Positions 7,916-58,800 are shown, numbered from the whole stretch's first letter. The stretch is 63,946 nucleotides of DNA, filler included, from Klebsormidium nitens (GCA_000708835.1; 7 parts of 7 records of this genome joined end to end with filler, not necessarily neighbours in it), one strand, 5' to 3'. The notes: generated from the sequence alone by a model not told the origin. Numbers and translations are program-made.

Positions 7916-9120
7916 TTTGTCTGTCTAGTTTTCCTTCCGCTTGCTGCTTTGTGCTTACTAATATGTCCTCCTTGGTAGCACTACACTGAAGTTGTGGCTT
8001 TAGCCCCTTTGCTGCTGGCAGATCTCTGAGCAAGATCACTACTCTGCTCCTCGCTCTTCCACGAGGAAAGGATGAGCGAACGACCCCTCAAAGACTCGAA
8101 CACCCCCCTTCACCTGTGGACAGGAGTGGACACTTCTGATCCAACAACCACGAGGAAGACGAATGAGCACAGAAACTATCTACAGATCAGACGGGGAAAA
8201 GGCTCCACAAGTCACTCAGAATTGCTGTAGAAGTGCCTAAAGCGTCAATGCAAGCCCCTTATTCCACGGTCATGTTTGAGGCCGCCATAACTCTTGTATC
8301 CCACGTGATGTCCACTAATGGACGCGGCAGCCACACCTTCGCTGATCAGAAGAAAAGCCCTTCTGTTCTGATTGAGAAAGCGGTTCGAGTGGTCAAGGCT
8401 TCCTATCGCCGTGTTTTCCCACAGATTAGCGCCCCCCTTCTTACCAGCGAAGTAGGCAAAAAAAATTCCACAAATACAAGAACAAGCAGGTGACGGGCTG
8501 CTTTGCAGTTTATGCAGGTGATCAGTGAACCCCCAAACTTAAAGCGCTAGATTCACAATCTGGCATCCCCCTTCCATGCGCGACCATCCGGCGTCAATGC
8601 AGCGCCAGGTTTGAAAGTTGCGGTTTAGAGGCTAGAGGCTGCTTGTCCGATTTGAACTTCATGTGCCACTTGCCGCCCGATAGTTCATCTGAGCCGTCCG
8701 ATCTCATTAGGTTTACAGTAGCTTTAGATGGGTTACTACCGGTAGTCAGAGACAGTGTCTCTAGAGAGGGAGTGCATGCTGTTCATCCGTGCTGAACTGT
8801 TCATGAACAGCCTGCTGATCAACAGTGAAGGAGAGAAGTCGTGAAAGCAACAGCCAACAGGAGAAAACCTGTGAGTGGGGACGTCAGGAGGACACTGAGA
8901 ACATCCGGGTGCGTTGCTTGATTGTTTGCATCTGTCTGGCATCAGTGCAGGTTCCAGCACGCTGCAATGCCAGCAGAGTAGATTTGTTCAGTACAATTGC
9001 ATCACATTGGAACGCACACCACTCACATCCCACAAGTTGACAGAACTGATTTGCGAAACTTTGCTATACTTTAGTTCTGCCTTTGCCAGAGCTTAATACA
9101 GGTTCTTCCACTGATTTAGA

Positions 9121-12100: not shown

Positions 12101-15100
12101 TTGGTGCTGATGGACGTTTCTTAGACGCAGATGATGGTGTTAATCGGCTCTTTTTCCGACGCGCAGAGCTGGTGCTGATGGACGCCGCGGTAGGCATCAA
12201 GGGCATCCTGAAGAAGGCACGTGACCTGGCCAACGAGATCCCGCACGGGTGGTACTGCGACCAGTTCGACAACCATGCGAACCAACGGGTAAGAAGCACG
12301 TTGTCACGAGGGTCTCTAGAACAATCTTAGGCGCACTAGATGTTTTTCATATGCAAACCATGGAGAATCAGCTGCGGTAAGAAAAACGCCCTGAAAAGGA
12401 TTCTCCCCATTGCGCAGACTCACTATCACACCACGGGCCCCGAGATCTGGCGCGACACCGCCGGCAAGGTTGATTTCTTCGTGGCGGCTGTGGGAACGGG
12501 GGGAACGATCACGGGCGCCGGGCGGTACCTCAAGGAGCAGAACCCCGCCATCAAGGTCAGCTTTGAGCCCTTTCTGAGATTGCTAAAATCAAGGTTTCGG
12601 CGGGTCTGCTTCAACTTGCATTCCGGCGGCTTCCCTGTCTTTGCTCCAGGTTGTGTTTTGGCGGGACTCGTTCACCTGCTCCAAATCATGTTTCGGCGGA
12701 ATCCGTTTGTCTCCTCCAACTTGACTTTCGGCGGACTTCATTTACTTGATCCGAATCGTGTTTCGGCGGACTCCGTTCATCTGCGCCAAGGTGTGTTCCG
12801 GCGGCTCCTCGTCCACCTGGGCCATCCCATCTTTGATTCCAGATTGCTCTGAACCAGTTTCTTGAACGCGTGTCTCAGTGAAAATTGTGGCTGGAAAATC
12901 TCTTTCCCTTTCGGTAGCCTTAGCTCGTGGGCTTTTTGGCGGGAACCCTTTCGCTCTGTGTAATTTCCACGAGCAGGGTACCTTTTGCAATGAACTGAAC
13001 GAAGTGACACTTTGGAACGGCCTGGAAAAGCGACTGGACTTTACGATGCAGGAGCAGACTCTTATATCGAGCAGGTTGACGAAGCGTTCCGGACACAGAT
13101 CGCAGCAGCGTGAAAGCAGACTGTCGTTCCTTTCTCTTCGTCATCTGTATGCCCTTGATCCTCGTCCTTTTGTCTTGGTCTTCCGTCTTTCTCACCTCTT
13201 TCCGACCCGTTCGTCCTGGCCCGTTTGCTCCGCCCCCTTAAAGCATTCCCTCTTGTCTTAGGCCGCAAAAAGTCCTCCACGCATCGGTCACTACTGGGGA
13301 GAAGTAACTTCACCGGAGCTTTGTCAGGCTTGGGTTACATGCCTGTTTTAAATGGAGCGGATTAGCGCCTGGTATTGCCCGGTAACCAGTCTTGGATCAA
13401 AAGCAAAATCGTCACAAACCACCGTTGGTTATCGCCCTGTAACCGGTTCAGGAGCGAAATCGTCTCAAATCTCGTTGGTGATCGCCTCGTATGCAGTCTC
13501 GCGTAAAGAGCAAAAACGTCACAAATGTCGGGGCGGACGGGGACCGCTTATAAGTGCGCGAGCAGAACGTACGGCTAAAGGAAGAACGACTACGGGGGGG
13601 TTGTCGGGGAAGGTCAGCGGACGCTGCTCGGGCGTGGCGGCGTTACTGAGATGTTGGATCACACACAACCGTCATTGCTATCGAGTCTAAGGTGCCGGGT
13701 TGATGGGGTTATGAGAGGACGGTTAAGATACGACGGAATCACATCCTACTTTATAAATACAGAAAAGTAATAATCGCCGCTGAGTTATGGCATTGTTGCA
13801 GGTTGTGGCGGTGGAGCCTTCAGCCAGCCCGGTGCTGAGCGGCGGCAAGCCGGGGCCGCACAAGATTCAGGGGATGGGCGCGGGGATCCTCTCGCAGAAC
13901 ATGGACCAGCCGTTGTTCGACGAGATTATCCAGGTACGCGGTTGAGGTAAAATCCCTCACATCTATGGCAAACAGAACTCATCAAAGAATCAAACGTTTT
14001 TGCGGCATTCCCCGAAGAAGAGCGAAGCTATAAGACACTGCGCACTTTAAAGACATTCGATTAATGCTGTGGAGCAGAAATGAAAATAATCCTCTTATTA
14101 GGCCGTCAGCGATGAAAACAATGATAAACGCCGAAAGTGCTTGGTCCTTTGACACTCGTACAACAGGGAAGACTCGTTGCAGAGGGGAAGTGCCGCTTAG
14201 TGCAAGATTTACAGAACGGAGCGACCGTTAACTTCAGCTTCTGACGAGCTTGCAAGTTGTGGTGATCCACAAAGCACCGAATCGTGCGCAGTTCATTGTG
14301 TCCACATATGAGCGGTTGTCATTCGGAAGATGGTCGGTACCTAGCAAGTCTAGTGTTGAAGGGGCAAATGACCCGGAACCAGTCTGCACTGCGGTGTGCG
14401 ATCAATTCCCAGCCAAGTCGCCAAAGGTGATGTAGGGTACCTAGTCTTACAGGTTCCAAAGACTCCTGGTACTGCTTGCGCCTCCGCGTCAACGAGGCGG
14501 TGCTCGACCTCTCTCAATACACCACAGGGATCTCTCCTTAAAAACGTATTACCCCCGTTCATCTCTTCGAAGAAAGCTGATCGCAAACTTCCCACCGTGG
14601 CCGACGCCTTCCCTTCCGAAGAAGCGAGTCTCAGGATCTCCTATGCCTTGCAGGATATGTTCGTTAACGTTGGGGCGAAAATCGAAGCCCGTGAACCTCA
14701 AGCCTACGTTTCCACTGCTTTGCGGACTGAGTTCTTCAATCTTGTCGAGATTTAAGACTTGTTCAAGCCCATTTATCCACAGGTTGCTGACAGCGACGTT
14801 TTCGACATGGCCCGCGCCTTGGCTTCAAAAGAGGCGCTCCTGTCAGGGATCTCGGCGGGCGCCAACGTGCTTGCGGCGCTCCAGATCGCGCGGCGGCCCG
14901 AGAACAAGGGCAAGCTCATAGTGGTGAGGCGGACACCTTTAGCGGGTTTTCCGGCTGAGCGTTCTTGGCCAGACGTATAAGGAGCAACAGCGGCGCCAAA
15001 AGATGCTATTGAGCGATCCAGTCATCTGAATTGATCTCGGAGGGGCGTGGAGGCACGGGACATGATGTGGAGTTTAGGACAAGAGTGCAAAATTCTTGCG

Positions 15101-16816: not shown

Positions 16817-19662
16817 TCAGACACCCCCTCTGTCGCGCTTCGATTTCCGGCTGATGTCAGCATACGGGCCTCCCATAAGCTCGTGAACCTGCTCCCATAG
16901 CACCACCCCTGACCGCCGGCTTATGGTCCCCTCGGCTTGCTCGAGGCTCAGGGGGTGCGTGATGATGTCAGCGCTGCACGCCGCCAACTGCCAGGTTCCC
17001 TCACGAAGCTCCCGGGCCAATTGTCCCCGACCCCACCTGCGGGGAAAAAGGAAACTAGCTATGAGAGAGACAGAACCCGTGTCAAATATTAACGTCCGAC
17101 AGTGAAAGCGAAAGTTGGATTGTACCTGAGCGCGGAGCAGATGAAGTATGGCTGTGAGGTTCCAGTGTGCCTAAGCAATTAGTGAGACTGATTGTCCACG
17201 CCACTTTTATGTCAGTATGGATGGAACTGTATGCATGAGAGAGGACACACGAGGTGAGGCTCAGGGCCACAGGAAGGTTCTCCGATGATGAAGAAGGCCA
17301 AAGTTGTAGTTCGACAACATCTGTCGAGTCCATGCAAACTGCAGTGGCTACCTATATAGCCGTTTGGCTGTTGCGAAGAGTACCAGTACTTGACAACGCC
17401 AGGAAAGGTACATAGCAAGTTTGTCCGGTTATGAACACGAGCGAATTCTGTGACTCTTGCTATTGCAACTGGGAAAAATAACCTCTTTTCCACATACCCG
17501 GCGTAACCAACACAGAAGCGGAAGCTGGACGCTTTGGCCTTCCCAGCCGCGATGAGGTCCGAAAGACGCCAGCACGCTGCCGGCTCCCCGAAAAACACAC
17601 CAGGGACTACCTCCTCGAACCCCTCGACATTGGTCTCGCCCGAGACCGCGAAGATCTTGCCCTGGCTGATGGGGCCACCTAGGTAGACGCGCTCATTTCC
17701 AAAGCGCTTCTGAAAGGGCAGCGGGAGGCGCGGCACTTTTTCGAAAGTGAAGGGCATGGCGTGGTTCAGGATGATGCCGAATGTGCCCTGCGGAAGAGAA
17801 AGGGGGAGTGAGGGGAGCTCGAGGAAAAGTACTTGCATCTCTTGTGAAAGTTCCTTGCTTTGAAGGGAGAATGCAAGATTTCAAGTCGAAACAATCGAGT
17901 CAATGGAGAATGTGTCTTGCAGGGTGGGAAGACCGACGTCGCCTTCAGAGTCTCGTTCCAACACATCTTTCCACCATTAAATCCTAGTTTCAAACCCCAG
18001 GTGACACAACTACTTACCTCGTCTGAATGGTCAAGCACCAGAATGACGCTCCTGTCAAAGTAGTCGTCCCCGTCCAGGATCGTCGACGCCAGCAAGAGGC
18101 AGCCTTTCTCCGGCTCCTCGATCGCGTGCGCCCACTCCCGTCCCTGGATTCGGACGGCCTGTGGTGGCTCGTCGTCCGACGGGTCCGAAACGGACAGAGT
18201 CGTTGGGGCCGGGCTAGTCTGTGCTTTGGCCTGGTGTTCTTGCGCGACTAGCTGGGCGCGAAAGGTGCGCCAGTCGGCTTTGAGAATCGGGGGCGCGTCC
18301 TGTTGCAGAGTTAATTAGCGGTAAAATCTACGTTTTCATACTCTATGAATTTCAGACCAGATTTTGAGCTGGGGTACGAAGGGGTTCTCCAGGACCAGGC
18401 TGTGAGCTTTAGTGGCACAAGTGTAAGTAAGATGGCTGTGAATTACGAGAGTCCTTGCAAAGGAAGGAGCTCAAGCGACGAGAGTGGGCTAAGTGTGGCT
18501 GTTTTCCTGAATCTAGGAATATGGCTGCCAACAAGAGGAGGCGGCGCGCGACCGAAGTTGCACCACATTGAAGTTGCCTCCCATTTTGTGAAGTAGTCCT
18601 CTGAGAAGCAAGTCTCTAAGTTTAGTCCTCTACTTTGAAAAATAGTACAGTGTGGCTCCTTGCACAACCAAACAGAACTTACGCAAGCGCATGTGAGAAG
18701 AGGCTTCAAGAATGGGTAATATGAATTTAAAACCAAGAAGAGGACACTTGTCAGTGAAAGGGACAGTTTATGAGGGGAAGTTACCTCATCAGAAGCTGGC
18801 TCTGAGCCAGACCCCATGCGGCCCCCAGACTCCGCATCACTGTTGTCTTGCTTCGCAGCCGCACACCAATTTCTTCGTCGCTGACACCGTTCATGACCTA
18901 CAAGATGCAACAATGTACCACGTTCTTGCATGCCGGTGCAGCATGCCAAAGCAACTTGCAGTCTGCATTTCCTTGAGCCAATTGTTTCGAAGACAGTCTG
19001 CATCCTCCTCACCCAATTGCATCTTTCAATTCCGCAAAAGCCTAAGACTGGTTTGTGAGTTGCACATTAAGAATCAACGTACTACCATAGGAGCAGGTAA
19101 ATTCTACCAGGGGTTTTGAAGGTATGACTTTTGATGCATCTGTATCCTGCCTGGTTGAACGTGTACAACCATCTTTGACTTTCTACTTCAACCAGTATTT
19201 CTCTGTTCAACCAGCTGCTTAGCTCATACAAAAGGTTCTTTCACAGCAGAGCGCAAAATCACTTCATTCACAAGCAGTTCGACGCGCAGAATGAAGTCAA
19301 GGAGAGGCGAAAGCCCATTGAAAACAACAGTCCCATGTCAAGAGTATGTGTCTAAGCGGATTGTCCTTCCGAGCTGCTTAACTGCAATTCCAATTGAAAA
19401 TCTGCCCTGAACAGCTACAATTCGTTCATAGAGACATTGTACATGAAAAGGGATTGGTAGACCTTGCACCTCGTTCCAAGCGTTGCTGTTGAGACGCCTT
19501 TCGCATTGGCAGCTGCTGACTCCGCTGCCTGAACACCTTCCTGATAAGAGCTTCGCATTGCACTGAAGCACAACAGTCCTGCCCCTCCAGGCTTCTGTAC
19601 TCAATCAGTCGCCCTATTTGTCGCCCACAGTTGAACACAACTGATGAGGTCGCCATGCTCAT
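16817..19662 (-). CDS. DUF179 / AlgH-YqgE family protein, probably plastid-targeted
   Basis: Exons 18299-18018 (DWRTFRAQL, WAHAIEEPEKGCLLLAS, FDRSVILVLDH), 17787-17498 (GTFGIILN, VYLGGP, FRFCVGYAG) and 17036-16817 (WGRGQLARELREGTW). The N-terminal transit-peptide-like exons (from 19662 and ~18900-18785) are tentative. Confidence 0.85.
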
Positions 19663-20205
19663 TGAAGAACCCAGGAAAGCGCCTGAGCCACAACTTCCAG
19701 CTTTTAGTACCTAGTAGATTGTACTGCTGCACGAAAATCAGCTGGTTGACCTGCTGATTTTAAGAAATGCATGTGCTCAATGCCCTATGTGGCCTCCATC
19801 TGCGCCAATCTCTCAACAGGCGGCCAAATTCAAAGTTGCTTTCTTTTCAAAATTCAGTCTCAAGTTGAAGGAGTTCTTCCACTTCTTGCCTTCTTGCCTT
19901 CAGAGTATCAATATTCTACATATATGAGGTTGCGGAATTCTTAAATCCCTCAGTTTTTGCCACCTGAGTTCGCCCTGACTTCGACGGAGGCCTTCGACAG
20001 AAGAGTTCGAAGAAGCTTCTTTGACATGATATCAAATTGAAAAGTATATCGTGTAGCTGTTCTTGGCTCGACATCGAACGTTTTGATACTCGAAAGTTAG
20101 GATAACCGGTTGACGTACCGAACAATAGCCAAGCCGTTAAATACCATCTAGGTACAATTTACAAAGCTTCTACGCACTTCGGCTTCTTCACAACGGAGAC
20201 TCATA

Positions 20206-20903
20206 GGGTATTCGCACCTAACATTTTCCGGCTGATCTGTTCTTTTCTCGCGGGTTTCTTGCGAGTTCTCGTCGATTCTGGCCATTTCGGCCGCAAGAAA
20301 ACTGACAGGCAACTTTTTCTTGTGGCGGCTTTTCTTGCCGGTTCTTGTGTGATGCATAGCTTATGCAGTTCACCCGCGTATGGTCGACTTTGGATACCAT
20401 CGACGCCGTCCGATTGCCGTCCGGTGCTAAGATCGAAGCCATATCCAGCCGTTCGATCACAGCAATTGGGCCGGGCAGAAAAGACTTGAGCAGAGTACAG
20501 CCCGGTGCGAATAACCGGTCTTTTCTTGCCTGTTCTGGCTGTTTTCACAAGAAAAGCGGCAAGAAAAGATCCACAAGAAAAGTTGAAATCCTTTAGGTGC
20601 GAATAAGACTGGTGCGCCCTATTTCGGATGTTTTCGATTCCGGACGGGCAATGTTCGATCCGATTTTCGGACGGGTAAAACCAGGGTTTCACTCAGTGAA
20701 ATTGCAGTCGATTCGATACCGTTTTATTGCCAGATCGGAAAGTGGCCACGTCATCAAGCCGCGTTTCGATTTGCGAATAAAAAGCTATCGAACAGACTGC
20801 AGCTTCACAGAGTCAAACCCTGGGTTTACCCGTCCGAAAATCGGATCGAACATTGCCCGTCCGGAATCGAAAACATCCGAAATAGGGCGCACCAGTCTTA
20901 CCC
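20206..20903. mobile_element. Non-autonomous DNA transposon (MITE) with TA target duplication; outer element
   Basis: Left TIR GGGTATTCGCACCTAA (20206-20221). The right TIR TTAGGTGCGAATA...CCC is split by a second element. TA flanks at 20204-20205 and 20904-20905; internal inverted TTTTCTTG/CAAGAAAA motifs. Confidence 0.75.
20606..20898. mobile_element. Foldback MITE with 113 bp arms and TA target duplication; inner element
   Basis: Arms 20606-20718 and 20786-20898 are reverse complements (first 74 nt identical, 7 mismatches in total), with a 67 bp spacer. TA at 20604-20605 and 20899-20900. Confidence 0.88.
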
Positions 20904-21031
20904 TATCAGACTCAGAGTTCCTGCCTAGCCTGCTCAGTTGCTGTCGCCTACACGAATTTCTAGCGGGCATTCTTTGTCTCCATACATCCCTTTTTGCATT
21001 GTCATCTTAAAGTTACAGTGCCCCTTCTACC

Positions 21032-24022
21032 ATGGACCTTTTAGGAAGTTACGGCAGCGATGCGGAGAGCGATGCCTCCGATGACGAACAGCAACCTCCC
21101 CAGAATGCTGGTCGAGCCATCCTCACAGCACCTGATCCCAGCCCTACCGACTTTAACGAAGGCGCCCCCTCTCAAATCACAGGACTCACTAGAAAAGGTC
21201 TCTTTAGTGCGCTGCCTCCTCCTAGGGGCAAGAGCGACGGAATGCCTGAAGAAAAGTGGAGGAAGGAGGGAAGCAGGTGAGATGCCACAGTGTGACTTGC
21301 ATTGTTGCGTGCGGATGAATCTCAGCGCGGCTTGATGTTGTAAAACGGTTTTGCCTGAGAAAATTGGCACAACAGGACAGAAATAAATAGTTCCATCGAA
21401 GAACGATGTGCTAGTGGTATTAACTATGGTTTGACAAATGGAATGGCAGGGTCCCTCTTCTGCCGACGCTTGATGGCGCCACGCCATTTCAGCTTGAATT
21501 TAAATCTTGTGTTTCTTCCTGGCTCTTTGATCACGTTGAGGTGTTCGCAGGGAATGGCATTTGGTTTTCAAGTGTCTTGCTTTGACGGTGCCCTTTGTTC
21601 AGTGGACTAAGCAATCGCCAGAACAAAGACTCTAATCAGTTCAGGTGTCTCACCTGCTGCACTCTAGTAGAGAAGAAAAAGTGGTCTGTGCTGGAACAGC
21701 CAGAGAGTTTCCTTTCATGCGCCCCCGCCTACCTTTCTCTTTAGCCTTTTCTTTTGTACCACAGGTCACTCTTTGCTGCTCTACCGCCACCAAAGGCGTC
21801 CTTAGAGCGCCCCCCCATTGTGGATCTGCAAAGCGATCTGGCGCTAGGTACAACAAAGCCCCCGACATTGCTCCCCCCCAAAAGAGGCGTTGTGCAGTTC
21901 CGACCACCGATTGACACGTCGTATCTGACCAAGGCTGATGATCGAGATGAGGATACCTGGCAGCCTCCCAAGAAGAAGGTCAGGCGATTTTACCACTAGT
22001 GCCATCTTCCGTGTCTTCCTTCCTGGGATTTGCTTAGCCCGTGGAACTCGCACAAAAGTCGAACTTTAAGAGTTTCATTGTCTGGCTTCAGAGGACTTTA
22101 GATTTGGTCAAAGGAGACGGGCTAAATGTCTCTCGCTGTCTAAGGGCCAGTCGAAATCAAATACCTTTCCTGACTTGGTGGACAACTCTGAAAAAGAAGA
22201 CCTGGGTGGATGGCTTGTTTCTGCAGCAAACTTTGTAAAGACAAGCCTTGGAGTGAGAGATTTATTCCGTGTTGTCAGAGACCCACTGCTTACACGCCGT
22301 TTTTCGATTTTCAGGGACGGACGGCTGAGGTCGCGGACGAAGCGCCGGCAGAGAAGAAACCGACCAAGTCATCTTTCGCCTCCTTCTTGCCCCCGCCCAA
22401 AAACAGCTTGGGGGCTGGAAACATTCTGGGGGGAGGCGCCGTCGGCGGCCGAAAAATGGCCATGGACACGTCAATTGGTTCAGAGTCTCTTGATGAGGGC
22501 CCACGGATACAGCTGGACCCCATTGAAAAATCCACTCTGACTGGTGCGGCCGTAAATGGCTCAGCACCTGTGCGAGAAGACGGTGTCAGTGGAAACGGGG
22601 GGCTTGCAAAAGCAGGAACGGAAGAGTTGGGGTACCCTGCAAGTGAGGGTCATACTCAGGCTGGGTACGGAGCTGCCGCTGAGTCCAGCTATGCATCAAA
22701 CGGGGCTGGTCTGCCTCCGACATTCGAGCAACCCGGAGTCTCCTTCGGTTATCAGCAGCCGTACCAAGCAGGGACTTCGTACGACCCCTACGGTCAAAGT
22801 TACGTTGCGCCTCAGTATGGGGGGGCGAACACGTGGCAGCCCGACGGGCCGCCAGGTGGCGGCGTAGCAGCGCCCCCGGTGGACCTGCTCACAGCGAAGC
22901 TTATGGAAGAGGAGGCGCGGGCGATGAGGAGGGGCGGGGGGAGGGCGAGCGGGGCGCAAGTTGTCGAAGTAAGAGCTGAAACTCCTAACAAGTCGCACGA
23001 TTCTCTTGAGCACGTTTCTTCGAGGATAACAAAGTTGAAGGCTTTGTTATTCATGAATGTTCCCTCTAAGCAGACCCTGAGGACTACCGGCCACAGGCGC
23101 CAGGGAAAAGAGCCGGAAGCATTCTGCCTTCAATTCAACGAGACGTCGGGTGCCTTGTTCAAGGCTGTAATCTGACTTGTAGGTTGAAATGTAGTCTTTG
23201 CTTTGGTGGCATTTCTTCTGGTCGCCTTCTCGCTCACCTTTCTATTTCAACTGATCCCCAGAGGCTGTGACATCCTTGGTGTATTCATTCTGGCCTTTTA
23301 CAGGGGTTCGGAAGGAAGTGGCCGGATAGCTGGTCAATTGTAGCGCGGGATACGGTTCTGCCTTCTTTGCGCCGCCCGTCGAGCTCAGAGGTTTCAAAGC
23401 TTTGAGAACATTGTCACGGTGCACAGAGCTGCCCTTAAACAGTCCAATAAGTCGACTTCATATTCCAGTTCACATCAACGTTGCAATCCACTTTGTTATT
23501 ACAGGTATGAGCAATCAAGTCGGTTAGGTATTTCGATTCAACCTCGCATGCTTGAGAAACTTGATGATCCTTAAACTTACTGAGAACGACTTTCCAGATG
23601 TGTGTCATTTTTCCATCTGGAAAGTCTGCCAAAATATCATCCAGACGCTATCCAGAAGTGGAAAACTCGTGCATACCGACTGTGCTTAGCAATATGCGCA
23701 GCGCTCATCTTGGAATTCAGAGCGCTTATCCTAAAAGTTTGAGCGCCTATCCTGAAACATAAGCCTTGGTCTGCAGGTCAAGCAAGCGGATATTACCCCC
23801 GGCACGTACAGGCGGGAGGACATGCTCAAGACGTCGACATTTGGCCCACAAGCGCAGCCAGTGTCGAGCGCAAAGGACGCAGGGCCGGGGAAGATGGAGA
23901 GGCGGAAGCACCAGATCAGCTCGCTCTACGCCGACATGAAGAAGAAAGAGATGGAGATGGTGGACTCACGGGCTACGGGGATGCAGACGAAAGCGCAGAC
24001 GAAGGGGAAGTATGGGTGGTAA
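21032..24022 (+). CDS. PRCC: Proline-rich PRCC-family protein, 4 exons
   Basis: Exons 21032-21276, 21765-21978, 22315-22968 and 23777-24022. MDLLGSYGSD start, repeated LF(S/A)ALPPP motifs, and C-terminal RRKHQISSL...TKAQTKGKYGW*. Confidence 0.85.
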
Positions 24023-25231
24023 CCAATTGAAACGACATTCGCTTTTGCAAGTCAACTGGGCACTCGCGGGAAATGAGCCCCTTGAGAGCGTTGCTGACTC
24101 CATTATCGCTGTGTCAGTATGTTTGCAGCACTGAAGTGTACGCTCTTCTCTAACATCCAAGTATAAGCCTGCTTTCCATGTCACCTGACAAATCGTCTGC
24201 ACGAGCTTGTACAAAACATGCAACGTGACGTTCACCCATGCGGTTGATCCTATTCCGCATGGCAACCGATGCACGAAGAGTATGGCTCTCGGAAGTACCT
24301 AGAGCCAATTGTAAAGTCCCCATGCCGGATCCAGCATGCAGTCAGCATGCAGTCAAAAAGGGCTCAGTCGCAAGCGAGATTACATGCTACTCGTGACCGG
24401 CCGGGCGGCATGGTCGTTTGAGTTTGAAAGACTCCAATCTATCATGAATCGGAAGTTAGCCCGTATTCTTAACCGTCCGTCGGTCGACAGGCGGGTATAC
24501 ACAACTCCGACGGTTGTGGTTGAAGGACGGTTAAGCCTAGCTTGCTAGCTCTTAGCTTTTGCAACTCGTCGAGCCGAAATTACTTATGGTGCTGCGTGGC
24601 ACTAGCTGCATATCGCTCAGCTAGATCATTCCGATCATTCAAGTATAATCTGATTGAAACCGTGGGTTGAAGCATGCTTAACTGAGTGCATGAATTCGAC
24701 GGTAGTATATAAGCTAGCTGCTTTATATATTGCATGCCGCCGTACGTCGCCGACTCGTGCGACTTGAGCCATCACGCAAATTACAACGACACGGACCATG
24801 AGAGCCCCTGTCTATCACTCGCGGCTTGAGAGGATCATATATCAGAAAGCAATGATTCTATAGTATGATCGTTAGCTCTGCATTCACTCTAGCTAGCTTT
24901 AGTGCGGACCATCGATTCGAGTCAAGTCCCGCACTGAGCCATCATTGCTGGCCCAAATAACGGATCAGGTGTTGATACGCGCGCTGAATATTTAGACGCA
25001 TGTGAGGCATGGGCACGGACTTCAGAACCGGAATTTTGAGCGTTCAAAGGCGGCCGCCTCTTCTGGTAAATGCACCCAGATAAAATCAAGGCCTGAGGAC
25101 AGTAAAGTCTATCTCAATAAGGCGTGCTAATCACCTAATCACTGACAAGTGTTAGTACCTCAACTAGTCCAATATTTCGATGAATTAACGGTGTCTTTGA
25201 CAGCATATTACCTCGGTCCTTCATAATAACG

Positions 25232-53533: not shown

Positions 53534-54594
53534 ACATCTTGGAATAGTCTCTCCAATAGAGCTTTCAAACATTTGTAACGGCTCTTCGAAGGGTTGAACC
53601 GTACTAGATGAAGCGGCATCTTCACTACGTCCTTTAGCTTGCCAATGCGGTCCACCTCACACTCGACGGCGTAGTGTCTGTGATACGATTCGTCCACCTC
53701 GAGGATGACTACGTGAGAGTTGAATACGAAGACGTAGTCTGGACGTCGCACGCATGAGCTCTCGCGAGTGGACATCTGGCGTGCGCAAGGGAGCTCCTGG
53801 TCTGAGTACGACCAGGTCCAGCCCATCTTATCGAGCCATTTGGTCGTGTACGTCTCCCACTGCTTGAGGGCAGTCCCTGAACGGCACGAATAGCAGGCAC
53901 CGCCCTTGAAATGCACCGATTTCTCGGAGCAGACGATGCAGCGGTGTCCAAGTTGCCCACATCGTTTGCCCCCACCATGTGCAATGCAATAGTCAGTAGC
54001 CCCTGCCGCAAGCTTGGGGCAGCTAGCTTTTGCACACCGTTTGCCTCCGCCGTGTGCGATGCATAGATTGGTACCACCTTGCACCGACTTGGTGCAGTTT
54101 GCCTTGGCACACCGTTTGCCTCCACCGTGTGCCTTGCATTGGTGAGTTGGCGCGATCGCTGACTTGGTGCAGCCAGCCTCCGCACATCGTCTGCCTCCGC
54201 CGTGTGCGACGCAATGGTCAGTGCCGCCTTGCGCCGACTTGATGCACCCACGCTCAGCACACCGTTTGCCTCCGCCGTGTGCAATGCGGAATTCGGTGCC
54301 GCTTTGAGCTGACTTGGGGCAGCCAGTCTGCCCACACCGTTTGCCTCCGCCGTGTGCGACGCAATGGTCAGTGCCGCTTCGCGCCGACTTGGTGCACCCA
54401 CGCTCAGCACACCGTTTGCCTCCGCCGTGTGCAATGCAGAAATCGGTGCCGCGTTGAGCTAAATTCGGGCAGCCGGAATGCCCACACCCTTTGCCTCCAC
54501 CGTGAGCCTTGCAAAACTTCGAAGGCCATCGTTTGTACTTGGAACAGCTGCTCTGAGCGGACTCGTTGCGTTTCCGCTTGCGTGAGGTCTCCAT
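53534..54594 (-). CDS. Cys/His 25-aa repeat protein (WRKY19-like zinc-finger repeats) fused to CxxC motifs and a PD-(D/E)XK-like endonuclease; 3' truncated
   Basis: Seven full CxxxxCxxxAxxxTxxCxAHGGGxR-type repeats plus one partial; then CIVC...CYSC and RPDYVF...VILEVDESYH...CEVDR...LVRFNP. Confidence 0.8.
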
Positions 54595-54898
54595 AGTCGA
54601 CTAACCATATGCCGCACCGCCGTTGCCTTAAATAGGAGAGAAACATTGTTCACAACATAGACCTCAAAGAAAACACGGATTCCGTGAGGAACGAGAAGAA
54701 CGTCCACCGGCCCACGTCCTACGGCACTGTCATTGCCAGTGGGAAGGGCCCGCCCCCCCTCTACGGTTCGTCTGATCCAGCCGTGCGAGCAATGCTGGGC
54801 CGGATCCAACGAGGGGAAGGAACGAAAGCTTGAAGCCGGTTACCGCTTTCAGATCGCGTTCGCACCCATGACGTATATTTTGTATGTGAGTCGACGAT

Positions 54899-55336
54899 AT
54901 GGATCAGCTGACCTGGGTCTTGGCTCAAACCAGAGCTTATCTGTTGGCGTCTATCTCGGTCAAAGGCGTGGAAGACTTAGCCGTCACTTTAGACGTCTCC
55001 CATCTGGGGCTCTCTGCGGCGAGCATGGCCTGGCTGTGCGAGGTCCCGCATCGCCACGTCTGTTGCATGCCCATCATCGGCTATTGGACGTCGTACGTGG
55101 ACAAAGGGGTCATCACCTACTACCGAGGCGACCTGTCGCGCGCCTCGCGGTACGCCATGCACCTGCTCCGGCCGCCGGTGCACCACTATCTCCATGAGAC
55201 GGAGAGCGCCTTTGCGGTCTTGCTCGACGGTGACGGCAATCCCGTCTCTCGTAACACTCTGTATTTTCTGGATCTGGATGACAAACGGAACAGAAACGGG
55301 TCGTCGCGTACATGGGACCTGGGACGGTGGGCATGA
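54899..55336 (+). CDS. Hypothetical protein, 145 aa
   Basis: Intronless ORF with protein-like composition that fills the space between neighbours in a gene-dense block. Confidence 0.45.
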   Translation: MDQLTWVLAQTRAYLLASISVKGVEDLAVTLDVSHLGLSAASMAWLCEVPHRHVCCMPIIGYWTSYVDKGVITYYRGDLSRASRYAMHLLRPPVHHYLHETESAFAVLLDGDGNPVSRNTLYFLDLDDKRNRNGSSRTWDLGRWA

Positions 55337-55453
55337 CCAAGATCTGTTGAGGCGGTCGATACTCGAACTCCATAGCATGCGCCTGCCGTGAGGATGGACG
55401 GGTGCATACGGCCCACGAGAAGCACCCCACCAGATAGCGTGGTTTGAGACGCA

Positions 55454-56086
55454 TCATGGGCACATCGTGATGGTGTAAGACGGCGCGGATCCGCACGTCC
55501 GCACGGAGGTAGGGTCGTCGAAAGCGTAGGTGTAGGCGTCGGGGCAGAGCGTCTTGAAGTAGAGGGAGAGCTCGTTCGCAGGGCACGTCTCGGGCGTGCG
55601 GTGGTCCCCGGTGCAGCAGAACTCTGGCGCGGCGTACTTGCTGCAGGCGCTGAGGCACGGGGCGCCGTCGTACTCTACCAGATCGGCCGGGCACGCCGCC
55701 ACGTCGAACGCGCACTGGATCGTCGGGCAGTCGTCGGAGGACGGCACGATGCGCATGCCGGAGTCGAAGCCGTCCACGATGCTGATGTCGTAAAAGTCGT
55801 CGTTCGAGTCGTCGATGAAGAATTCCGCGAGAGTGTTGACTCGATCCTGGGTGGAGTTGTTCCGGATCCGGCCGCCCCATCCATGGGGGACGACGATCTG
55901 CGACGATTCGGCGCCGGGGGCTAAAATTCTCGAAGGAGACGCGTCTAGCAGCCCCCACGTGCCCTCGATGGCCCACGTCACCTCCGTCGAGCAGTTGTTG
56001 CGGACGGTGAGAATCCTGCCGGAGCACGACTTCGCGGTCATGAGGGCGAGGAGGATGCCGACGATCAGAGAGGAACGCACTGCCAT
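55454..56086 (-). CDS. Secreted thaumatin-like (PR-5) protein, intronless
   Basis: Hydrophobic signal peptide; motifs TVRNNC, WGGRI, TLAEF, FYDISIVDGF, CLSAC, FCCTG, CPDAYTYAFDD and TITMCP*. Confidence 0.92.
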   Translation of the reverse strand: MAVRSSLIVGILLALMTAKSCSGRILTVRNNCSTEVTWAIEGTWGLLDASPSRILAPGAESSQIVVPHGWGGRIRNNSTQDRVNTLAEFFIDDSNDDFYDISIVDGFDSGMRIVPSSDDCPTIQCAFDVAACPADLVEYDGAPCLSACSKYAAPEFCCTGDHRTPETCPANELSLYFKTLCPDAYTYAFDDPTSVRTCGSAPSYTITMCP

Positions 56087-56133
56087 GGCGCATATAGGAG
56101 AGTCGGCAAATTATCTGAGGCGACGAAGAGTCC

Positions 56134-57090
56134 TCAACGTAGATGGTCGGCCGGCCGGAAGGACTCGTTGAGCAAGCAGAAGCGCTCGATGGCACCCTTG
56201 AAACGACCGAAGTTGGCCGAAGGCGTCGCAACGAGGTCTTCCACCGTCTCGACGTCCCCTCCCGTCTCCTGAAAGAACTCCAAGCAGAGGAGACCCCTAG
56301 CGGAAGGACGATCCTCCTCCGGGCCTATGCAGGCTTCGATGAGGGCCCGCAGGTTTCGGTTCCGAACGAATTGCAACTCCTCCGGACGGGAGCCGTTCAA
56401 CACCTCGACGTACAGCTCGCTCACCGACTTCATCCGCCCGTACGGCTTCTTGAGCGTCGTGATCTGCAAGATCGTCATCCCCAGGGCGTACACGTCCGCC
56501 TTCAGCCCGTAAGACCCCCGCAGGACCTCGGGCGCCATGAACTCCGCGGTCCCCAGGATGGAAGCGTTCGACCTGGATTTGCTGGTCACGGTGGCGAACC
56601 CGAGGTCGCCCAGGGCGAGGTCGCCGGTGTAGTTGTTCACGAAGACGTTCCCCGCTTTGATGTCTCTGTGTGCCACCGAGTTGGGCAGTCCCTCGTGGAG
56701 GTAATCGACCGCCTCGCACAGCTGTTTCGCCCATTTCCTGATGACCGAGGGCACTTGCTTTCCGTGCTTGCGCAGGTAGACGTCGATCGAGGAGCCGTAG
56801 AGGTCGGTCACGAACACCATCTCCTCCGCACGGACGTCCGTCCAACTGGACACGAGCCGGACTATGTGTGGATGGTCCAGGCTCGTCATCACGGCGATCT
56901 CTTTGGCGATGTCGGCGGTCCCTCCAGGCTCCAGTCCCGACAGCCTCGCCTTGCACCAGGCCACCTCCCGGCCCTCGTGACGGTCGAATGCTCGAAATAC
57001 GGACTTGTTGGCCCCCGTCCCGATCCGCTCCCCCATGCACACGTACCTGTTGCTGGGGTCGACCCACCTGACGTCCATTTCGTACCACAC
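56134..57090 (-). CDS. WNK-family Ser/Thr kinase, kinase domain only, intronless
   Basis: IGTGANKSVF (Lys in the G-loop), EGREVAWC, HRDIKAGNVFVN, GDLG, GTAEFMAPE, ADVYALGM and KPY. Confidence 0.9.
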   Translation of the reverse strand: MWYEMDVRWVDPSNRYVCMGERIGTGANKSVFRAFDRHEGREVAWCKARLSGLEPGGTADIAKEIAVMTSLDHPHIVRLVSSWTDVRAEEMVFVTDLYGSSIDVYLRKHGKQVPSVIRKWAKQLCEAVDYLHEGLPNSVAHRDIKAGNVFVNNYTGDLALGDLGFATVTSKSRSNASILGTAEFMAPEVLRGSYGLKADVYALGMTILQITTLKKPYGRMKSVSELYVEVLNGSRPEELQFVRNRNLRALIEACIGPEEDRPSARGLLCLEFFQETGGDVETVEDLVATPSANFGRFKGAIERFCLLNESFRPADHLR

Positions 57091-57099
57091 ATGCGGATT

Positions 57100-57630
57100 T
57101 TACACTCCGGGCTTACGCGGGGCCGATTGGCTAGTTCCGAAGGCGCTCGTGGCGAGCCCGCGGTCGAGCGGCACGGGAAGGGTCGCCATGTCTTTCAGAT
57201 ACCGCACCTGCATGTCTATGTTCGTGACCACCATGGGGACGAGCTGTCCGAGGACGATCTCATCGAGCTGGCTCACCTGCTCCGCCACGTCGTACGCAGA
57301 ATACCTGCAATTCTCCTCGAACACCCGCATCATAGCCGCCACCATGTGCTCGTCGGACTGGCGGTCGATCCCGTACCCGGTCTTTTGCAGCACCCTCGAG
57401 TACAGCTGTCGCTGGAGCGACTCTATGTTGTCACGGCAGAAGAAAGCGAAGTGAATCTCGATGGGCTGGGTGCGCAGCACGTCGAAGATGTGTTGCTCCG
57501 CCAGCGTGGGCTCCCGCGTTGGCACGAAGTCGGAACCCCGTCGCAGCTCGACTCGCGGCGGCTCGAAAGGCAAGTTCGTCGAGGCAAACAGAACATCCGC
57601 CGGCGTGCGCCTCGCGTCCCTGGCCGCCAT
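57100..57630 (-). CDS. NCLDV minor capsid protein P8 / DUF5761-like
   Basis: FFCRDNIESLQRQLYSRV..KTGYGIDRQS...LDEIV...YLKDMATLPVPL matches, from memory, the FFSxxNIxxLQ...IDxQS...YLxDxxxLPxPL pattern of this giant-virus family. Confidence 0.75.
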   Translation of the reverse strand: MAARDARRTPADVLFASTNLPFEPPRVELRRGSDFVPTREPTLAEQHIFDVLRTQPIEIHFAFFCRDNIESLQRQLYSRVLQKTGYGIDRQSDEHMVAAMMRVFEENCRYSAYDVAEQVSQLDEIVLGQLVPMVVTNIDMQVRYLKDMATLPVPLDRGLATSAFGTSQSAPRKPGV

Positions 57631-57682
57631 CGCCAGACCTTCGTAAGATAAGCGGCCGGTTTTTTTCGCCGGGCCACGCGAC

Positions 57683-58420
57683 TCAGACGGGGGAGATGAG
57701 CTTGTTGAAGGACTCTGCCAAGACGTCCAACACCTGAGCGATGTAGGCCCTGCAGTCCAAGATGCAGACTATGGCGTGCCGTCTCTTCAGTACGGAGGCG
57801 ACGTCGCCCTTCTCGAAGGCCGCCAACTCCAGGGCGGTCAGCACGCCACCGATGTTCTCGCTGAGAGAGCAGAGCGCCTCTCGCAGCCGCCCGTTCAGCC
57901 TCAGCTGGAGACCGTACGACGCCGACAATCGAAGCATGAGGTCCGTGACGTCCAAGACGGCTCCTTCGTACGTCGAGCGGTGAGACCACGGACAGAATCG
58001 CGATAGATGCTTCGATCCCAGTCCGGCGCAGGCCTGGAGTCTCGACAAGCGCCGTATAAGCCCGTCGTTGCAGGATTCGATCCTGTGTCTCAGCAACACG
58101 TTCGAAGACTGCACGCTCAACAAGTCCTTCAGCTCGGGCTCGAATTCCTGGGCGTCCGGCACGAGCGCCGTGGTGAGGAGATCGTCGGCCGGAAGCGGAT
58201 CTAAGATGGCCACCACGGCCTCTTCCACCCCGTCCAAACGCCGATCCACCGTCTTGACGACTTCTTGACAGCGCTGTATCAGCACGCACCACGCGCTCGT
58301 GAGCGTCTCCACCTCCTTGGTAGTCAGAGCCATCCCGTGCTCGAAGCGGTCGTCGAAGTCGCTGTACTCTACACGCGACTCCTCGATGAGCTGCAGCAGG
58401 TCGAAGAGGTTGTCCATCAC
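57683..58420 (-). CDS. Hypothetical helical protein, 245 aa
   Basis: Intronless ORF with GC-ending codons, 16 bp from the RNase H stop and co-oriented with its neighbours. Confidence 0.6.
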   Translation of the reverse strand: MMDNLFDLLQLIEESRVEYSDFDDRFEHGMALTTKEVETLTSAWCVLIQRCQEVVKTVDRRLDGVEEAVVAILDPLPADDLLTTALVPDAQEFEPELKDLLSVQSSNVLLRHRIESCNDGLIRRLSRLQACAGLGSKHLSRFCPWSHRSTYEGAVLDVTDLMLRLSASYGLQLRLNGRLREALCSLSENIGGVLTALELAAFEKGDVASVLKRRHAIVCILDCRAYIAQVLDVLAESFNKLISPV

Positions 58421-58436
58421 CTTCCTAGTACCGTGA

Positions 58437-58800
58437 TTATTTCTGGCTCGTCGCGATCAAGGCAGCATTCGCGAGGGCATCCGCGGCGGCATTCTTGCTG
58501 CGTGGCACCCACTCCAGAGTGCATGACTGGAAGGACGACTTCAGGCGCCTCGCTTCGGCGTGCAACGGCACCAGGTTCGGCGCCTTTACCTTCCAGCGAC
58601 CATTCACTTGGCTCACGACCAGCAATGAGTCTCCGTACACATTCACGTGGGTCACCCCGTTCGCAGCGCACCAATCGAGGACCATCACCAGCCCGCCGTA
58701 CTCCGCCTCGTTATTGCTGCCCCTGTCCGACAGGAATATGGAGCCCTCGAACACGGTCAGACCGTCCGGATCTACGACCGTACCGCCGGCCCCGCACCTG
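58437..58800 (-). CDS. Ribonuclease HI (archaeal/actinobacterial-like type), 5' truncated by the contig end
   Basis: The frame is open to 58800 (GAGGTVVDPDG...). Motifs SNNEAEY, VYGDSLLVVSQVNGRWKVK and WVPRSKNAAADALAN. Confidence 0.9.

What the first reader, a model, noticed from the sequence alone, without database searches (positions are those of the whole stretch)
53534..58800. Giant-virus-like gene block combining a capsid component with captured host signalling and defence genes
Seen: seven intronless ORFs in 5.3 kb, six on one strand, gaps as short as 9-52 bp among the five right-hand genes, CpG-rich and visibly more GC-rich than the host contigs, whose genes are all multi-intron. Content: RNase HI, an orphan, a P8/DUF5761-like minor capsid protein, a WNK kinase, a thaumatin, a second orphan and a Cys-repeat nuclease. 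Knowledge: P8/DUF5761 is a Nucleocytoviricota virion family, and endogenous giant-virus segments occur in green algae. Inference: a fragment of an uncharacterised NCLDV of streptophyte algae, endogenous or co-sequenced, with an auxiliary module for host ion/osmotic signalling and wall glucans. This is the best candidate for a new system here.
Basis: partly seen in the sequence, partly recalled or inferred. Interest (0 to 1): 0.88.

Follow-up and report, generated by a model that had tools for sequence, protein, structure and literature searches.

The report
Giant-virus insert in Klebsormidium genome
This 5.3-kb piece is a gap-bounded contig of the published Klebsormidium nitens genome, and it belongs to the giant-virus-like DNA already reported in that alga. 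It carries a capsid protein gene next to a viral WNK-type kinase, a thaumatin-like protein and a probable mobile nuclease gene.

Summary
Seven intronless genes fill 89% of 5,267 bp (GC 0.605, CpG o/e 1.13).

**Gene content**
- RNase H.
- A conserved orphan of 245 aa.
- A P8-like minor capsid protein (Pfam P8_CR, 79 bits; the only significant PDB match is the minor capsid protein P8 in entry 6ncl).
- A kinase-domain-only WNK-type kinase.
- A thaumatin-like protein.
- An orphan of 145 aa.
- A protein with seven WRKY19 zinc fingers and a PD-(D/E)XK-like C-terminal domain.

**Source.** The piece is 100% identical to Klebsormidium nitens NIES-2285 scaffold DF237884.1, positions 19439-24705, and lies between two assembly gaps.

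**Viral context.** In metagenomic relatives (73-95% P8 identity) the same block sits within 10 kb of VLTF3, A22 resolvase and A32 ATPase. Other K. nitens scaffolds carry diverged copies.

**State of the genes.** No complete gene here is broken. dN/dS against a 93%-identical relative is 0.15-0.42.

**Verdict.** The giant-virus (NCLDV) origin and the streptophyte host are supported. NCLDV inserts in this genome were published in 2017, so the kind is known. Recent capture from the host is not shown:
- The kinase belongs to a conserved family of short viral-context kinases.
- The thaumatin's best named relatives share only 30-36% identity.

The apparently unreported details are the viral WNK-type family and the nuclease gene at a synteny break. 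Whether this scaffold is integrated into host DNA remains unproven.

The parts
58437..58800 (-). RNase H (RVT_3 type). Its 5' end is lost in the 1,093-N assembly gap. The full-length orthologue is 139 aa.
   Evidence: Pfam RVT_3 2e-24. Orthologues at 75-95% identity in L001-L006. The L006 orthologue's best solved relative is the RNase H domain of Rv2228c, E 1.8e-28. dN/dS 0.24.
57683..58420 (-). Conserved orphan of 245 aa, always immediately upstream of the P8 gene.
   Evidence: Present at 64-99% identity in all six relatives next to P8. No Pfam, PHROG or PDB match. dN/dS 0.33. The K. nitens model GAQ92165.1, named 'probable phosphoglycerate mutase', covers it.
57100..57630 (-). P8-like minor capsid protein, 176 aa.
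   Evidence: Pfam P8_CR 3.3e-22, 79.2 bits, cut-off 26.9. A profile of six relatives hits only the chain named P8 in 6ncl/8h2i, E 8e-4, 173 aa. In BFVD, ranks 1-11 have prob 0.99-1.00: seven are named P8_CR proteins of NCLDVs, one is an uncharacterized chlorovirus protein and three carry no name. The model itself is weak (pLDDT 57). dN/dS 0.15.
56134..57078 (-). WNK-type serine/threonine kinase, kinase domain only. It is 314 aa from the ATG; the ORF listing starts it at a GTG at 57090.
   Evidence: Pkinase 5e-41. Best PDB hits are WNK3 and WNK1 at 2e-48, against 3e-26 for the first non-WNK kinase. Lys in the Gly loop in 17/17 family members and no Lys at the beta3 site in 17/17. HRD, Asn, the DLG Asp and APE are invariant; DLG Leu and Gly are kept in 16/17. 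dN/dS 0.20.
55454..56086 (-). Thaumatin-like protein of 210 aa with a hydrophobic N-terminus. It is an accessory gene of this sub-lineage.
   Evidence: Pfam Thaumatin 1.7e-36, profile positions 74-209 only. Best PDB hit is the thaumatin-like protein 2ahn, 3.9e-30. Present in L001, L006 and, at 58%, in L007; not found at E<=1e-4 on the parts of L002-L005 that were read. dN/dS 0.20.
54899..55336 (+). Orphan of 145 aa, the only plus-strand gene.
   Evidence: Orthologous ORFs in L001 and L006 at 83-91% identity, dN/dS 0.42, GC3 0.74. No family hit.
54595..54898 (.). Divergent intergenic spacer that contains the synteny break with the closest relatives.
   Evidence: DNA similarity to L001 and L006 (92.5-93%) ends at window 54910 and 54863 respectively.
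53534..54594 (-). Seven WRKY19-type zinc fingers plus a C-terminal PD-(D/E)XK-like domain. It is probably a mobile nuclease gene. Its 3' end is lost in the 1,581-N gap, about 44 codons judging by P0155.
   Evidence: Zf_WRKY19 1e-43, 7 repeats. 75-nt tandem periodicity at 53958-54522. Absent at this place in L001 and L006. GC3 0.62. 59% identity to the 397-aa P0155 on a different viral-like contig. Invariant D, D-E and R in the C-domain, with alpha-beta-beta-beta-alpha-beta topology in the model. No significant fold or sequence match.

Best explanation
The piece is one sequence contig (positions 19439-24705) of scaffold DF237884.1 of the Klebsormidium nitens NIES-2285 genome assembly. It is a segment of one of the several giant-virus (Nucleocytoviricota, phycodnavirus-like) genome copies in that assembly. 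These copies are most likely integrated or latent viral DNA.

It has three layers:
1. A conserved viral backbone of RNase H, a 245-aa orphan, the P8-like capsid-cementing protein and a WNK-type kinase. In sister elements this backbone lies 5-9 kb from VLTF3, the A22 resolvase and the A32 packaging ATPase.
2. A sub-lineage insertion of a secreted thaumatin-like protein plus a small orphan, between the kinase and a histidine-kinase/receiver gene.
3. A WRKY19-zinc-finger protein with a restriction-endonuclease-like domain, inserted at the edge of that block. It behaves like a selfish, intragenomically mobile gene.

**Shown:** source, gene identities, synteny, intactness and purifying selection.

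**Inferred:**
- P8 sits under the capsid shell, as its PBCV-1 namesake does.
- The kinase is catalytically active and acts on host, or possibly viral, targets in the way WNK kinases act in ion and osmotic signalling.
- The thaumatin-like protein, with the GH17 glucanase on the same scaffold, deals with beta-1,3-glucan (callose) of the Klebsormidium wall at entry or exit.
For: - **Source.** 5,267/5,267 identity to DF237884.1, with N gaps of 1,093 and 1,581 on either side.
- **Capsid gene.** P8_CR at 79 bits, and a hit to the PDB chain named P8.
- **Viral context.** Relatives L002 and L003 carry VLTF3, A22 and A32 within 10 kb of the same RNase H-orphan-P8-kinase order.
- **Other copies in the same genome.** The A22 and A32 of L002 fall in 90% clusters with K. 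nitens proteins on a 137.7-kb scaffold. K. nitens scaffold DF237402.1 carries a 52%-identical WNK-type kinase among YqaJ, TBP, mRNA triphosphatase, TFIIB and DNA methylase genes.
- **Published record.** The same assembly has 5 DNA polymerase, 6 MCP, 6 ATPase and 5 VLTF3 genes, with polymerases 40-92% similar, placed with Phycodnaviridae (PMC5294986).
- **Selection.** dN/dS is 0.15-0.42 for six genes, and no gene in the piece has a stop or frameshift.
- **Thaumatin insertion.** In L005 and DF237402.1 the kinase is followed directly by the histidine-kinase/receiver gene. The thaumatin and the orphan therefore appear to be inserted in the window/L001/L006 lineage.
- **Nuclease gene.** It is absent at this site in the 93%-identical relatives and has lower GC3.
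- **Glucanase.** GH17 lies on the same scaffold.
Against: - No host junction is seen in the piece.
- The neighbouring scaffold contig with GC 0.47 and no viral similarity is linked only across a gap.
- Intact genes and undepleted CpG (1.13) would also fit free viral DNA in the culture.
- No core marker (MCP, PolB, A32, VLTF3) was seen on the part of this scaffold that I could read. Record positions 1-13587 were not read.
- The lineage placement rests on the 2017 paper, not on a tree made here.
- No tool here tested any of the inferred functions.
Confidence: 0.8

Rival explanations
1. Free or episomal giant-virus DNA that was co-sequenced with the Klebsormidium culture and never integrated. The scaffold would then be a fragment of a virion or replicating genome.
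For: - All complete genes are intact, dN/dS is 0.15-0.42, and CpG is not depleted.
- No host gene is seen in the 14 kb of scaffold read.
- The 2017 survey found viral-dominated contigs with a host juncture in only one of them.
Against: - Several diverged paralogous copies of the same genes occur in one assembly: the kinase at 52% on DF237402.1, and L002-type A22 and A32 on a 137.7-kb scaffold.
- The paper counts 5-6 copies of single-copy core genes at 40-92% similarity, which it judged incompatible with one contaminating genotype.
- The viral gene fraction of K. nitens is reported as strongly methylated (PMC12344493).
- The scaffold links the block to a contig with GC 0.47 and no viral similarity.
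Confidence: 0.15
2. Ordinary host genes of the alga: its own WNK kinase, PR-5/thaumatin and RNase H. On this view the P8-like gene is a single ancient transfer and there is no viral element.
For: The K. nitens annotation treats the region as spliced cellular genes, for example 'probable phosphoglycerate mutase'. WNK and thaumatin families are typical of plants.
Against: - Every gene is one uninterrupted ORF with spacers of 9-52 bp.
- The annotated models fuse unrelated ORFs (P8 with the kinase). This is the same artefact the 2017 paper described for this genome.
- The gene order is conserved next to VLTF3, A22 and A32 in relatives.
- The kinase lacks every WNK region outside the kinase domain.
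Confidence: 0.03
3. Contaminant DNA from a bacterium or another eukaryote, misassembled into the algal scaffold.
For: The block is short and gap-bounded, and its GC (0.605) differs from the next scaffold contig (0.47).
Against: - P8_CR is a Nucleocytoviricota virion family.
- No tRNA or Rfam family was found, and sigma-70-like promoter matches do not exceed the shuffled expectation (1 found against a mean of 1.2). Terminator-like hairpins were 6 against 3.4 +/- 1.6, a weak excess.
- Synteny resumes with viral-like relatives on the far side of the gap.
Confidence: 0.02

Closest known systems
NCLDV-like insertions of the Klebsormidium flaccidum/nitens NIES-2285 genome (Gallot-Lavallee & Blanc 2017, PMC5294986)
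   Same: It is the same assembly. It shows the same pattern of intronless, viral-dominated contigs, several diverged copies, accessory genes of plant-like families (expansin and cyclin there; WNK-type kinase, thaumatin and GH17 here), and the same fused-gene-model artefact.
   Different: That survey was anchored on five core markers. Scaffold DF237884.1 and its P8-WNK-thaumatin block were not found in any searchable paper. No core marker was seen on the part of the scaffold read here.
PBCV-1 (chlorovirus) minor capsid protein P8, PDB 6ncl / Pfam PF19065
   Same: It is a family member by Pfam gathering score. P8 is the only significant PDB hit, the length is nearly equal (176 against 173 aa), and the central region is helical.
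   Different: The similarity is distant: E 8e-4 to the solved chain and at most 31% identity to any BFVD entry. The terminal regions are not alignable.
Phaeoviruses (EsV-1 and brown-algal endogenous elements)
   Same: Phaeoviruses are large DNA viruses that exist as inserted copies. They carry a thaumatin-like gene and many histidine-kinase genes (PMC11890097). Relatives here carry a HisKA + receiver gene and, on L007, an EsV-1-7 Cys-repeat protein.
   Different: The host is a terrestrial streptophyte alga. The 2017 trees place the Klebsormidium core genes with 'Phycodnaviridae' rather than with the phaeovirus group. No phylogeny was made here.
Cellular WNK kinases (WNK1 and WNK3 structures)
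   Same: The catalytic lysine is displaced to the glycine loop, a non-lysine residue sits at the beta3 site, the DLG motif is present, and WNK kinases are the best solved relatives by more than 20 orders of magnitude.
   Different: Only the kinase domain is present (305-318 aa). The regulatory regions that follow it in cellular WNKs are missing. The genomic context is viral. Substrates and chloride sensitivity are unknown.

Membership tests
Nucleocytoviricota-derived genomic element (GEVE-like) | Encodes a virion protein family specific to the phylum | tested here: met
   P8_CR at 79.2 bits against a cut-off of 26.9. PDB chain P8 at E 8e-4. Named BFVD hits among the top 11 are P8_CR proteins of NCLDVs.
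Nucleocytoviricota-derived genomic element (GEVE-like) | Core genes (MCP, PolB, A32, VLTF3, D5) on the same element | tested here: inconclusive
   None lies in the 5.3-kb piece or in the 14 kb of scaffold read. VLTF3, A22 and A32 lie within 10 kb of the same block in L002 and L003. Scaffold positions 1-13587 were not read.
Nucleocytoviricota-derived genomic element (GEVE-like) | Dense, intronless coding unlike host genes | tested here: met
   89% coding, single ORFs, spacers of 9-52 bp. Host genes were not examined.
Nucleocytoviricota-derived genomic element (GEVE-like) | Physical junction with host chromosomal DNA | tested here: inconclusive
   The only link is across an N gap to a contig with GC 0.47 and no viral similarity.
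WNK kinase family | Catalytic Lys in the glycine loop and no Lys at the canonical beta3 position | tested here: met
   17/17 have Lys in the loop. The beta3 site is C, S, A or G in 17/17. The alignment to WNK3 agrees.
WNK kinase family | Regulatory regions C-terminal to the kinase domain | tested here: not met
   The protein ends about 30 residues after the kinase domain, and the whole viral-context family is 305-318 aa long. It works like a WNK kinase domain but is not a full WNK orthologue.
Thaumatin-like / PR-5 proteins | Thaumatin domain above the Pfam gathering score | tested here: met
   126.3 bits against a cut-off of 27.4, but only profile positions 74-209 match. PDB thaumatin-like protein 2ahn at 3.9e-30.
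Thaumatin-like / PR-5 proteins | Canonical cysteine framework (16 in long forms and 10 in short forms, from general knowledge) | tested here: inconclusive
   The precursor has 13 Cys. The pairing was not modelled.
PD-(D/E)XK (restriction-endonuclease-like) nucleases | alpha-beta-beta-beta-alpha-beta core with conserved acidic residues on strands 2 and 3 | tested here: met
   The AF2 model of P0155 has H245-257, E262-267, E283-290, E295-300, H310-324 and E328-333. D286, D301 and E302 are invariant and E299 is nearly invariant.
PD-(D/E)XK (restriction-endonuclease-like) nucleases | Significant sequence or structure match to a known member | tested here: not met
   The best Foldseek hit is an R2 retrotransposon protein at E 0.07. 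Pfam gives NERD at 0.19 and Hjc at 0.088. The PDB profile search found nothing relevant.

The most novel reading that the evidence does not exclude
The Klebsormidium elements and their 73-99%-identical environmental relatives may represent a still-circulating, latent (phaeovirus-style) giant-virus lineage of terrestrial streptophyte algae. On this reading its conserved kinase-domain-only WNK-type kinase is a virus-specific tool for taking over host ion and osmotic signalling, and the thaumatin/GH17 pair deals with the callose-rich wall. No virus of a streptophyte alga has been isolated as far as the papers read here say, and no paper in the searchable library combines WNK with Nucleocytoviricota.
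Probability: 0.25. Interest if true: 0.6.

Novelty: new member of a known kind. Interest (0 to 1): 0.35.

Why it matters
It pins an anonymous fragment to a named genome and scaffold. It also shows that part of the Klebsormidium nitens annotation there is wrong: a fused P8-kinase model, and a 'phosphoglycerate mutase' name given to a viral orphan.

It adds a non-core scaffold to the known set of giant-virus copies in this model streptophyte. The copy is intact and has evolved under purifying selection relative to environmental relatives, so this virus lineage was probably active recently.

The conserved WNK-type kinase family and the thaumatin/GH17 pair are concrete, testable candidates for how a giant virus handles a desiccation-tolerant, callose-walled alga close to the land-plant lineage.

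Tried and rejected
- **Exact look-up of the window's P8.** Not on record, because the K. nitens models are spliced fusions.
- **IMG/VR scans.** Two scans with P8 and with its alignment found nothing.
- **JGI metagenome scan with the thaumatin.** It gave only 32-41% relatives and did not recover the 99%-identical contig behind P0322.
- **Structure search of the nuclease-like protein.** No significant match. The PDB profile search also found nothing.
- **The 245-aa orphan.** No Pfam, PHROG or PDB hit, even with a seven-sequence profile.
- **The P8 model.** Confidence was low (pLDDT 57), so its BFVD hits serve only as agreement with Pfam and not for lineage.
- **Promoter motif hunt.** TCTCCTAT lies upstream of two genes but is not conserved in L006. 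I rejected it as evidence.
- **Bacterial-type signals, tRNA and Rfam.** No tRNA or Rfam match, and promoter-like sites at the shuffled expectation. Terminator-like hairpins were 6 against 3.4 +/- 1.6, which I did not treat as a signal.
- **Sample accessions and scaffold names.** Not found in papers.
- **Lineage tree.** Not made.

1. The WNK signature reported here comes only.
2. The tblastn table printed shows match bounds in relatives that bracket their frame breaks. I did not use them and give only counts.

Full report
**1. What is in the sequence**

The piece (window 53534-58800) has GC 0.605, CpG observed/expected 1.13 and 89% coding sequence. At this GC many long ORFs open in all frames, so I accepted a gene only if it had independent support. 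Seven genes pass.

| Window position | Strand | Gene | Main support |
|---|---|---|---|
| 58437-58800 | minus | RVT_3-type RNase H, cut at its 5' end | Pfam 2e-24 |
| 57683-58420 | minus | orphan, 245 aa | conserved in all relatives |
| 57100-57630 | minus | P8_CR protein, 176 aa | Pfam 3.3e-22, 79.2 bits, cut-off 26.9 |
| 56134-57078 | minus | protein kinase | Pkinase 5e-41 |
| 55454-56086 | minus | thaumatin-like protein, 210 aa | Pfam 1.7e-36 |
| 54899-55336 | plus | orphan, 145 aa | orthologues in L001 and L006 |
| 53534-54594 | minus | seven Zf_WRKY19 repeats plus a C-terminal domain, cut at its 3' end | Pfam 1e-43 |

Spacers among the five right-hand genes are 16, 52, 9 (or 21) and 47 bp. 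No tRNA or Rfam family was found. Sigma-70-like promoter matches do not exceed shuffles (1 against a mean of 1.2), and terminator-like hairpins show only a weak excess (6 against 3.4 +/- 1.6).

**2. Where it comes from**

The orphan245 orthologue on L006 falls in a 90%-identity cluster with Klebsormidium nitens protein GAQ92165.1. Fetching that gene's scaffold showed that the whole piece is 5,267/5,267 identical to K. nitens NIES-2285 assembly GCA_000708835.1, scaffold DF237884.1 (27,632 bp), positions 19439-24705.

- The piece's two edges are assembly gaps of 1,093 and 1,581 N.
- Beyond the larger gap the scaffold resumes similarity (92-95%) with the relatives L001 and L006. It then carries a GH17 glucanase (1.3e-48).
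- Beyond the smaller gap lies 1.8 kb of GC 0.47 with no similarity to any viral-like locus.
- The deposited gene models fuse separate ORFs: P8 with the kinase in a 438-aa model, and thaumatin inside an 823-aa model.
- One model is named 'probable phosphoglycerate mutase'. The likely reason is that the RNase H resembles the RNase H domain of Rv2228c.

**3. Evidence that it is giant-virus DNA**

- The P8 family assignment is above Pfam's cut-off. A profile of six relatives hits only the chain named P8 of PDB 6ncl (E 8e-4, 173 aa against 176 aa).
- A low-confidence model (pLDDT 57) still returns NCLDV P8_CR proteins among its top 11 BFVD hits (seven named as such, one uncharacterized chlorovirus protein, three unnamed). 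Identity is at most 31%.
- Five metagenomic proteins share 73-95% identity with the P8.
- Their contigs keep the order RNase H-orphan245-P8-kinase. In L002 (a 99-kb contig) and L003 this order lies within 10 kb of VLTF3, the A22 resolvase and the A32 ATPase.
- L001 and L006 are 92.5-93% identical in DNA to window 54863/54910-58800 and have the same six genes in the same order.
- L002's A22 and A32 cluster at 90% or more with K. nitens proteins on a 137.7-kb scaffold.
- K. nitens scaffold DF237402.1 carries a 52%-identical kinase next to YqaJ, TBP, mRNA triphosphatase, TFIIB and DNA methylase genes. It also shares two further genes with L006.
- This matches the published description of the assembly: 5-6 copies of each NCLDV core gene, polymerases 40-92% similar, contigs dominated by viral genes, one clear host juncture, 'Phycodnaviridae' placement, and fused gene models (PMC5294986).
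- Later papers cite Klebsormidium as a case of giant-virus endogenization and report methylation of its viral gene fraction.

**4. State of the genes**

No complete gene in the piece has a stop or a frameshift. Against L006, dN/dS values are as follows.

| Gene | dN/dS |
|---|---|
| P8 | 0.15 |
| kinase | 0.20 |
| thaumatin | 0.20 |
| RNase H | 0.24 |
| orphan245 | 0.33 |
| orphan145 | 0.42 |

Most of the roughly 7% divergence therefore accumulated under purifying selection. That is expected for replicating viruses or very recent insertions, not for old neutral relics.

In relatives, by count only:
- L001 has one stop in P8 and at least one frameshift in orphan245.
- L003's kinase has at least two frameshifts.
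- L002's kinase is truncated.
- L004 lacks the kinase.

Some of these breaks may be assembly errors.

**5. The individual genes**

*Kinase.*
- WNK3 and WNK1 are the best solved relatives (2e-48 against 3e-26 for the next family).
- In an alignment of 17 short relatives (41-94% identity), the glycine-loop lysine is present in 17/17.
- The canonical beta3 lysine is absent in 17/17, replaced by C, S, A or G.
- The HRD, Asn, DLG Asp and APE residues are invariant; DLG Leu and Gly are kept in 16/17.
- The proteins are kinase domain only (305-318 aa). Two of the three contexts I read are viral-like: the two 120-kb contigs L009/L010 and DF237402.1.
- It works like a WNK catalytic domain but fails the full-family test, because it has no regulatory tail.

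*Thaumatin-like protein.*
- The C-terminal two thirds match the family well (2ahn, 3.9e-30). The N-terminal third is divergent.
- It starts with a hydrophobic stretch and has 13 Cys.
- Its close relatives (59-92%) are all metagenomic. One sits on L007 with an EsV-1-7 Cys-repeat protein, a P11-like capsid protein and YqaJ.
- Its best named cellular relatives are Mucorales proteins at 30-36% identity. That search is word-limited and is not a phylogeny.
- In L005 and DF237402.1 the kinase is followed directly by the HisKA + receiver gene. The thaumatin and orphan145 therefore look like an insertion specific to the window/L001/L006 lineage.
- Thaumatin-like genes are already known in phaeoviruses and their endogenous copies.

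*WRKY19-finger protein.*
- DNA similarity to L001 and L006 stops in the spacer at 54863-54910, and the gene is absent from both at this site.
- Its GC3 is 0.62, against 0.79-0.87 for the backbone genes.
- 3,159 library representatives match the fingers. About fifteen of the best 150 hits share the full architecture.
- The closest of these (P0155, 59% identity, 397 aa) lies on another viral-like contig with ribonucleotide reductase, a helicase and a SET protein.
- The C-domain has invariant D, D-E and R residues. It models as alpha-beta-beta-beta-alpha-beta (pLDDT 78 overall).
- Nothing significant matches it in PDB or Pfam. The best leads are an R2 element protein at E 0.07, Hjc at 0.088 and NERD at 0.19.
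- I read it as a probable selfish nuclease gene. This is an inference.

**6. Interpretation and limits**

The giant-virus origin and the streptophyte association are well supported. Integration is likely, given the multiple diverged copies and the literature. It is not shown for this scaffold, so free viral DNA remains a 0.15 rival.

The functional readings are inferences from family knowledge. They cover capsid cementing, host osmotic and ion signalling, and callose wall handling together with GH17.

I could not read scaffold positions 1-13587, could not look up the 99%-identical contig behind P0322, and made no core-gene tree.

**7. Novelty**

The kind is known, both in general and for this genome. 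The new points are:
- the exact placement of the fragment;
- correction of the annotation;
- a conserved WNK-type kinase family in viral context, where a search for WNK together with Nucleocytoviricota found no paper;
- the nuclease gene at a synteny break.

Interest is modest.

**8. Slips**

A short WNK motif was recalled from memory in my early reasoning and was used nowhere. The table printed shows match bounds that bracket breaks in relatives, and I report only counts.

Noticed in passing
window 53534-54898: The WRKY19-finger/nuclease-like gene and its upstream spacer are absent at this site in the 93%-identical relatives. Its GC3 is clearly lower (0.62 against about 0.8), which suggests a recent insertion of a mobile gene. 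The far boundary is hidden in the 1,581-N gap.
   Followed up: partly
L012 3043-11061 (K. nitens DF237884.1 gene models): The deposited annotation fuses independent viral ORFs into spliced models: P8 with the kinase, and thaumatin with downstream sequence. It also names the RNase H tail plus orphan model 'probable phosphoglycerate mutase'.
   Followed up: yes
L012 1-1834: The scaffold contig beyond the 1,093-N gap has GC 0.47, no Pfam hit and no similarity to any viral-like locus. It may be host or repeat DNA and would be the nearest candidate for a junction.
   Followed up: partly
P0322 (JGI contig of 25,319 bp): An environmental protein is 99% identical to the window's 245-aa orphan, so a nearly identical element or alga exists in a metagenome. 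The contig could not be fetched because the look-ups were exhausted.
   Followed up: no
L012 12480-13754; L001 13346-14347; L004 5802-6773: A GH17 beta-1,3-glucanase gene recurs a few kb from the block in the K. nitens scaffold and in two relatives. It forms a possible functional pair with the thaumatin-like protein.
   Followed up: partly
L006 10265-11650; L005 3410-4525; L008 10891-14543: A HisKA + receiver (hybrid histidine-kinase-like) gene is the conserved neighbour of the WNK-type kinase. This recalls the many histidine kinases of phaeoviruses.
   Followed up: partly
window 54595-54601, 54889-54895, 54632-54639, 56094-56101: AGTCGAC lies directly before both divergent start codons of the 304-bp spacer. 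TCTCCTAT occurs only twice in the piece, both times just upstream of a gene start. Neither motif is conserved in L006, so both may be chance.
   Followed up: partly
L001 826-1200 and L006 2962-4558, 990-2588: L001 holds a second, partial RNase H copy at about 93% DNA identity. L006 has a run of short repeated ORFs and a 12-repeat Sel1 protein left of the block.
   Followed up: no
L009 and L010 (JGI contigs of 125 and 121 kb): Two near-identical long contigs from sister samples carry a 51%-identical WNK-type kinase among DNA methylase, AAA ATPase and HSP70 fragments. They probably represent a further related viral lineage.
   Followed up: no
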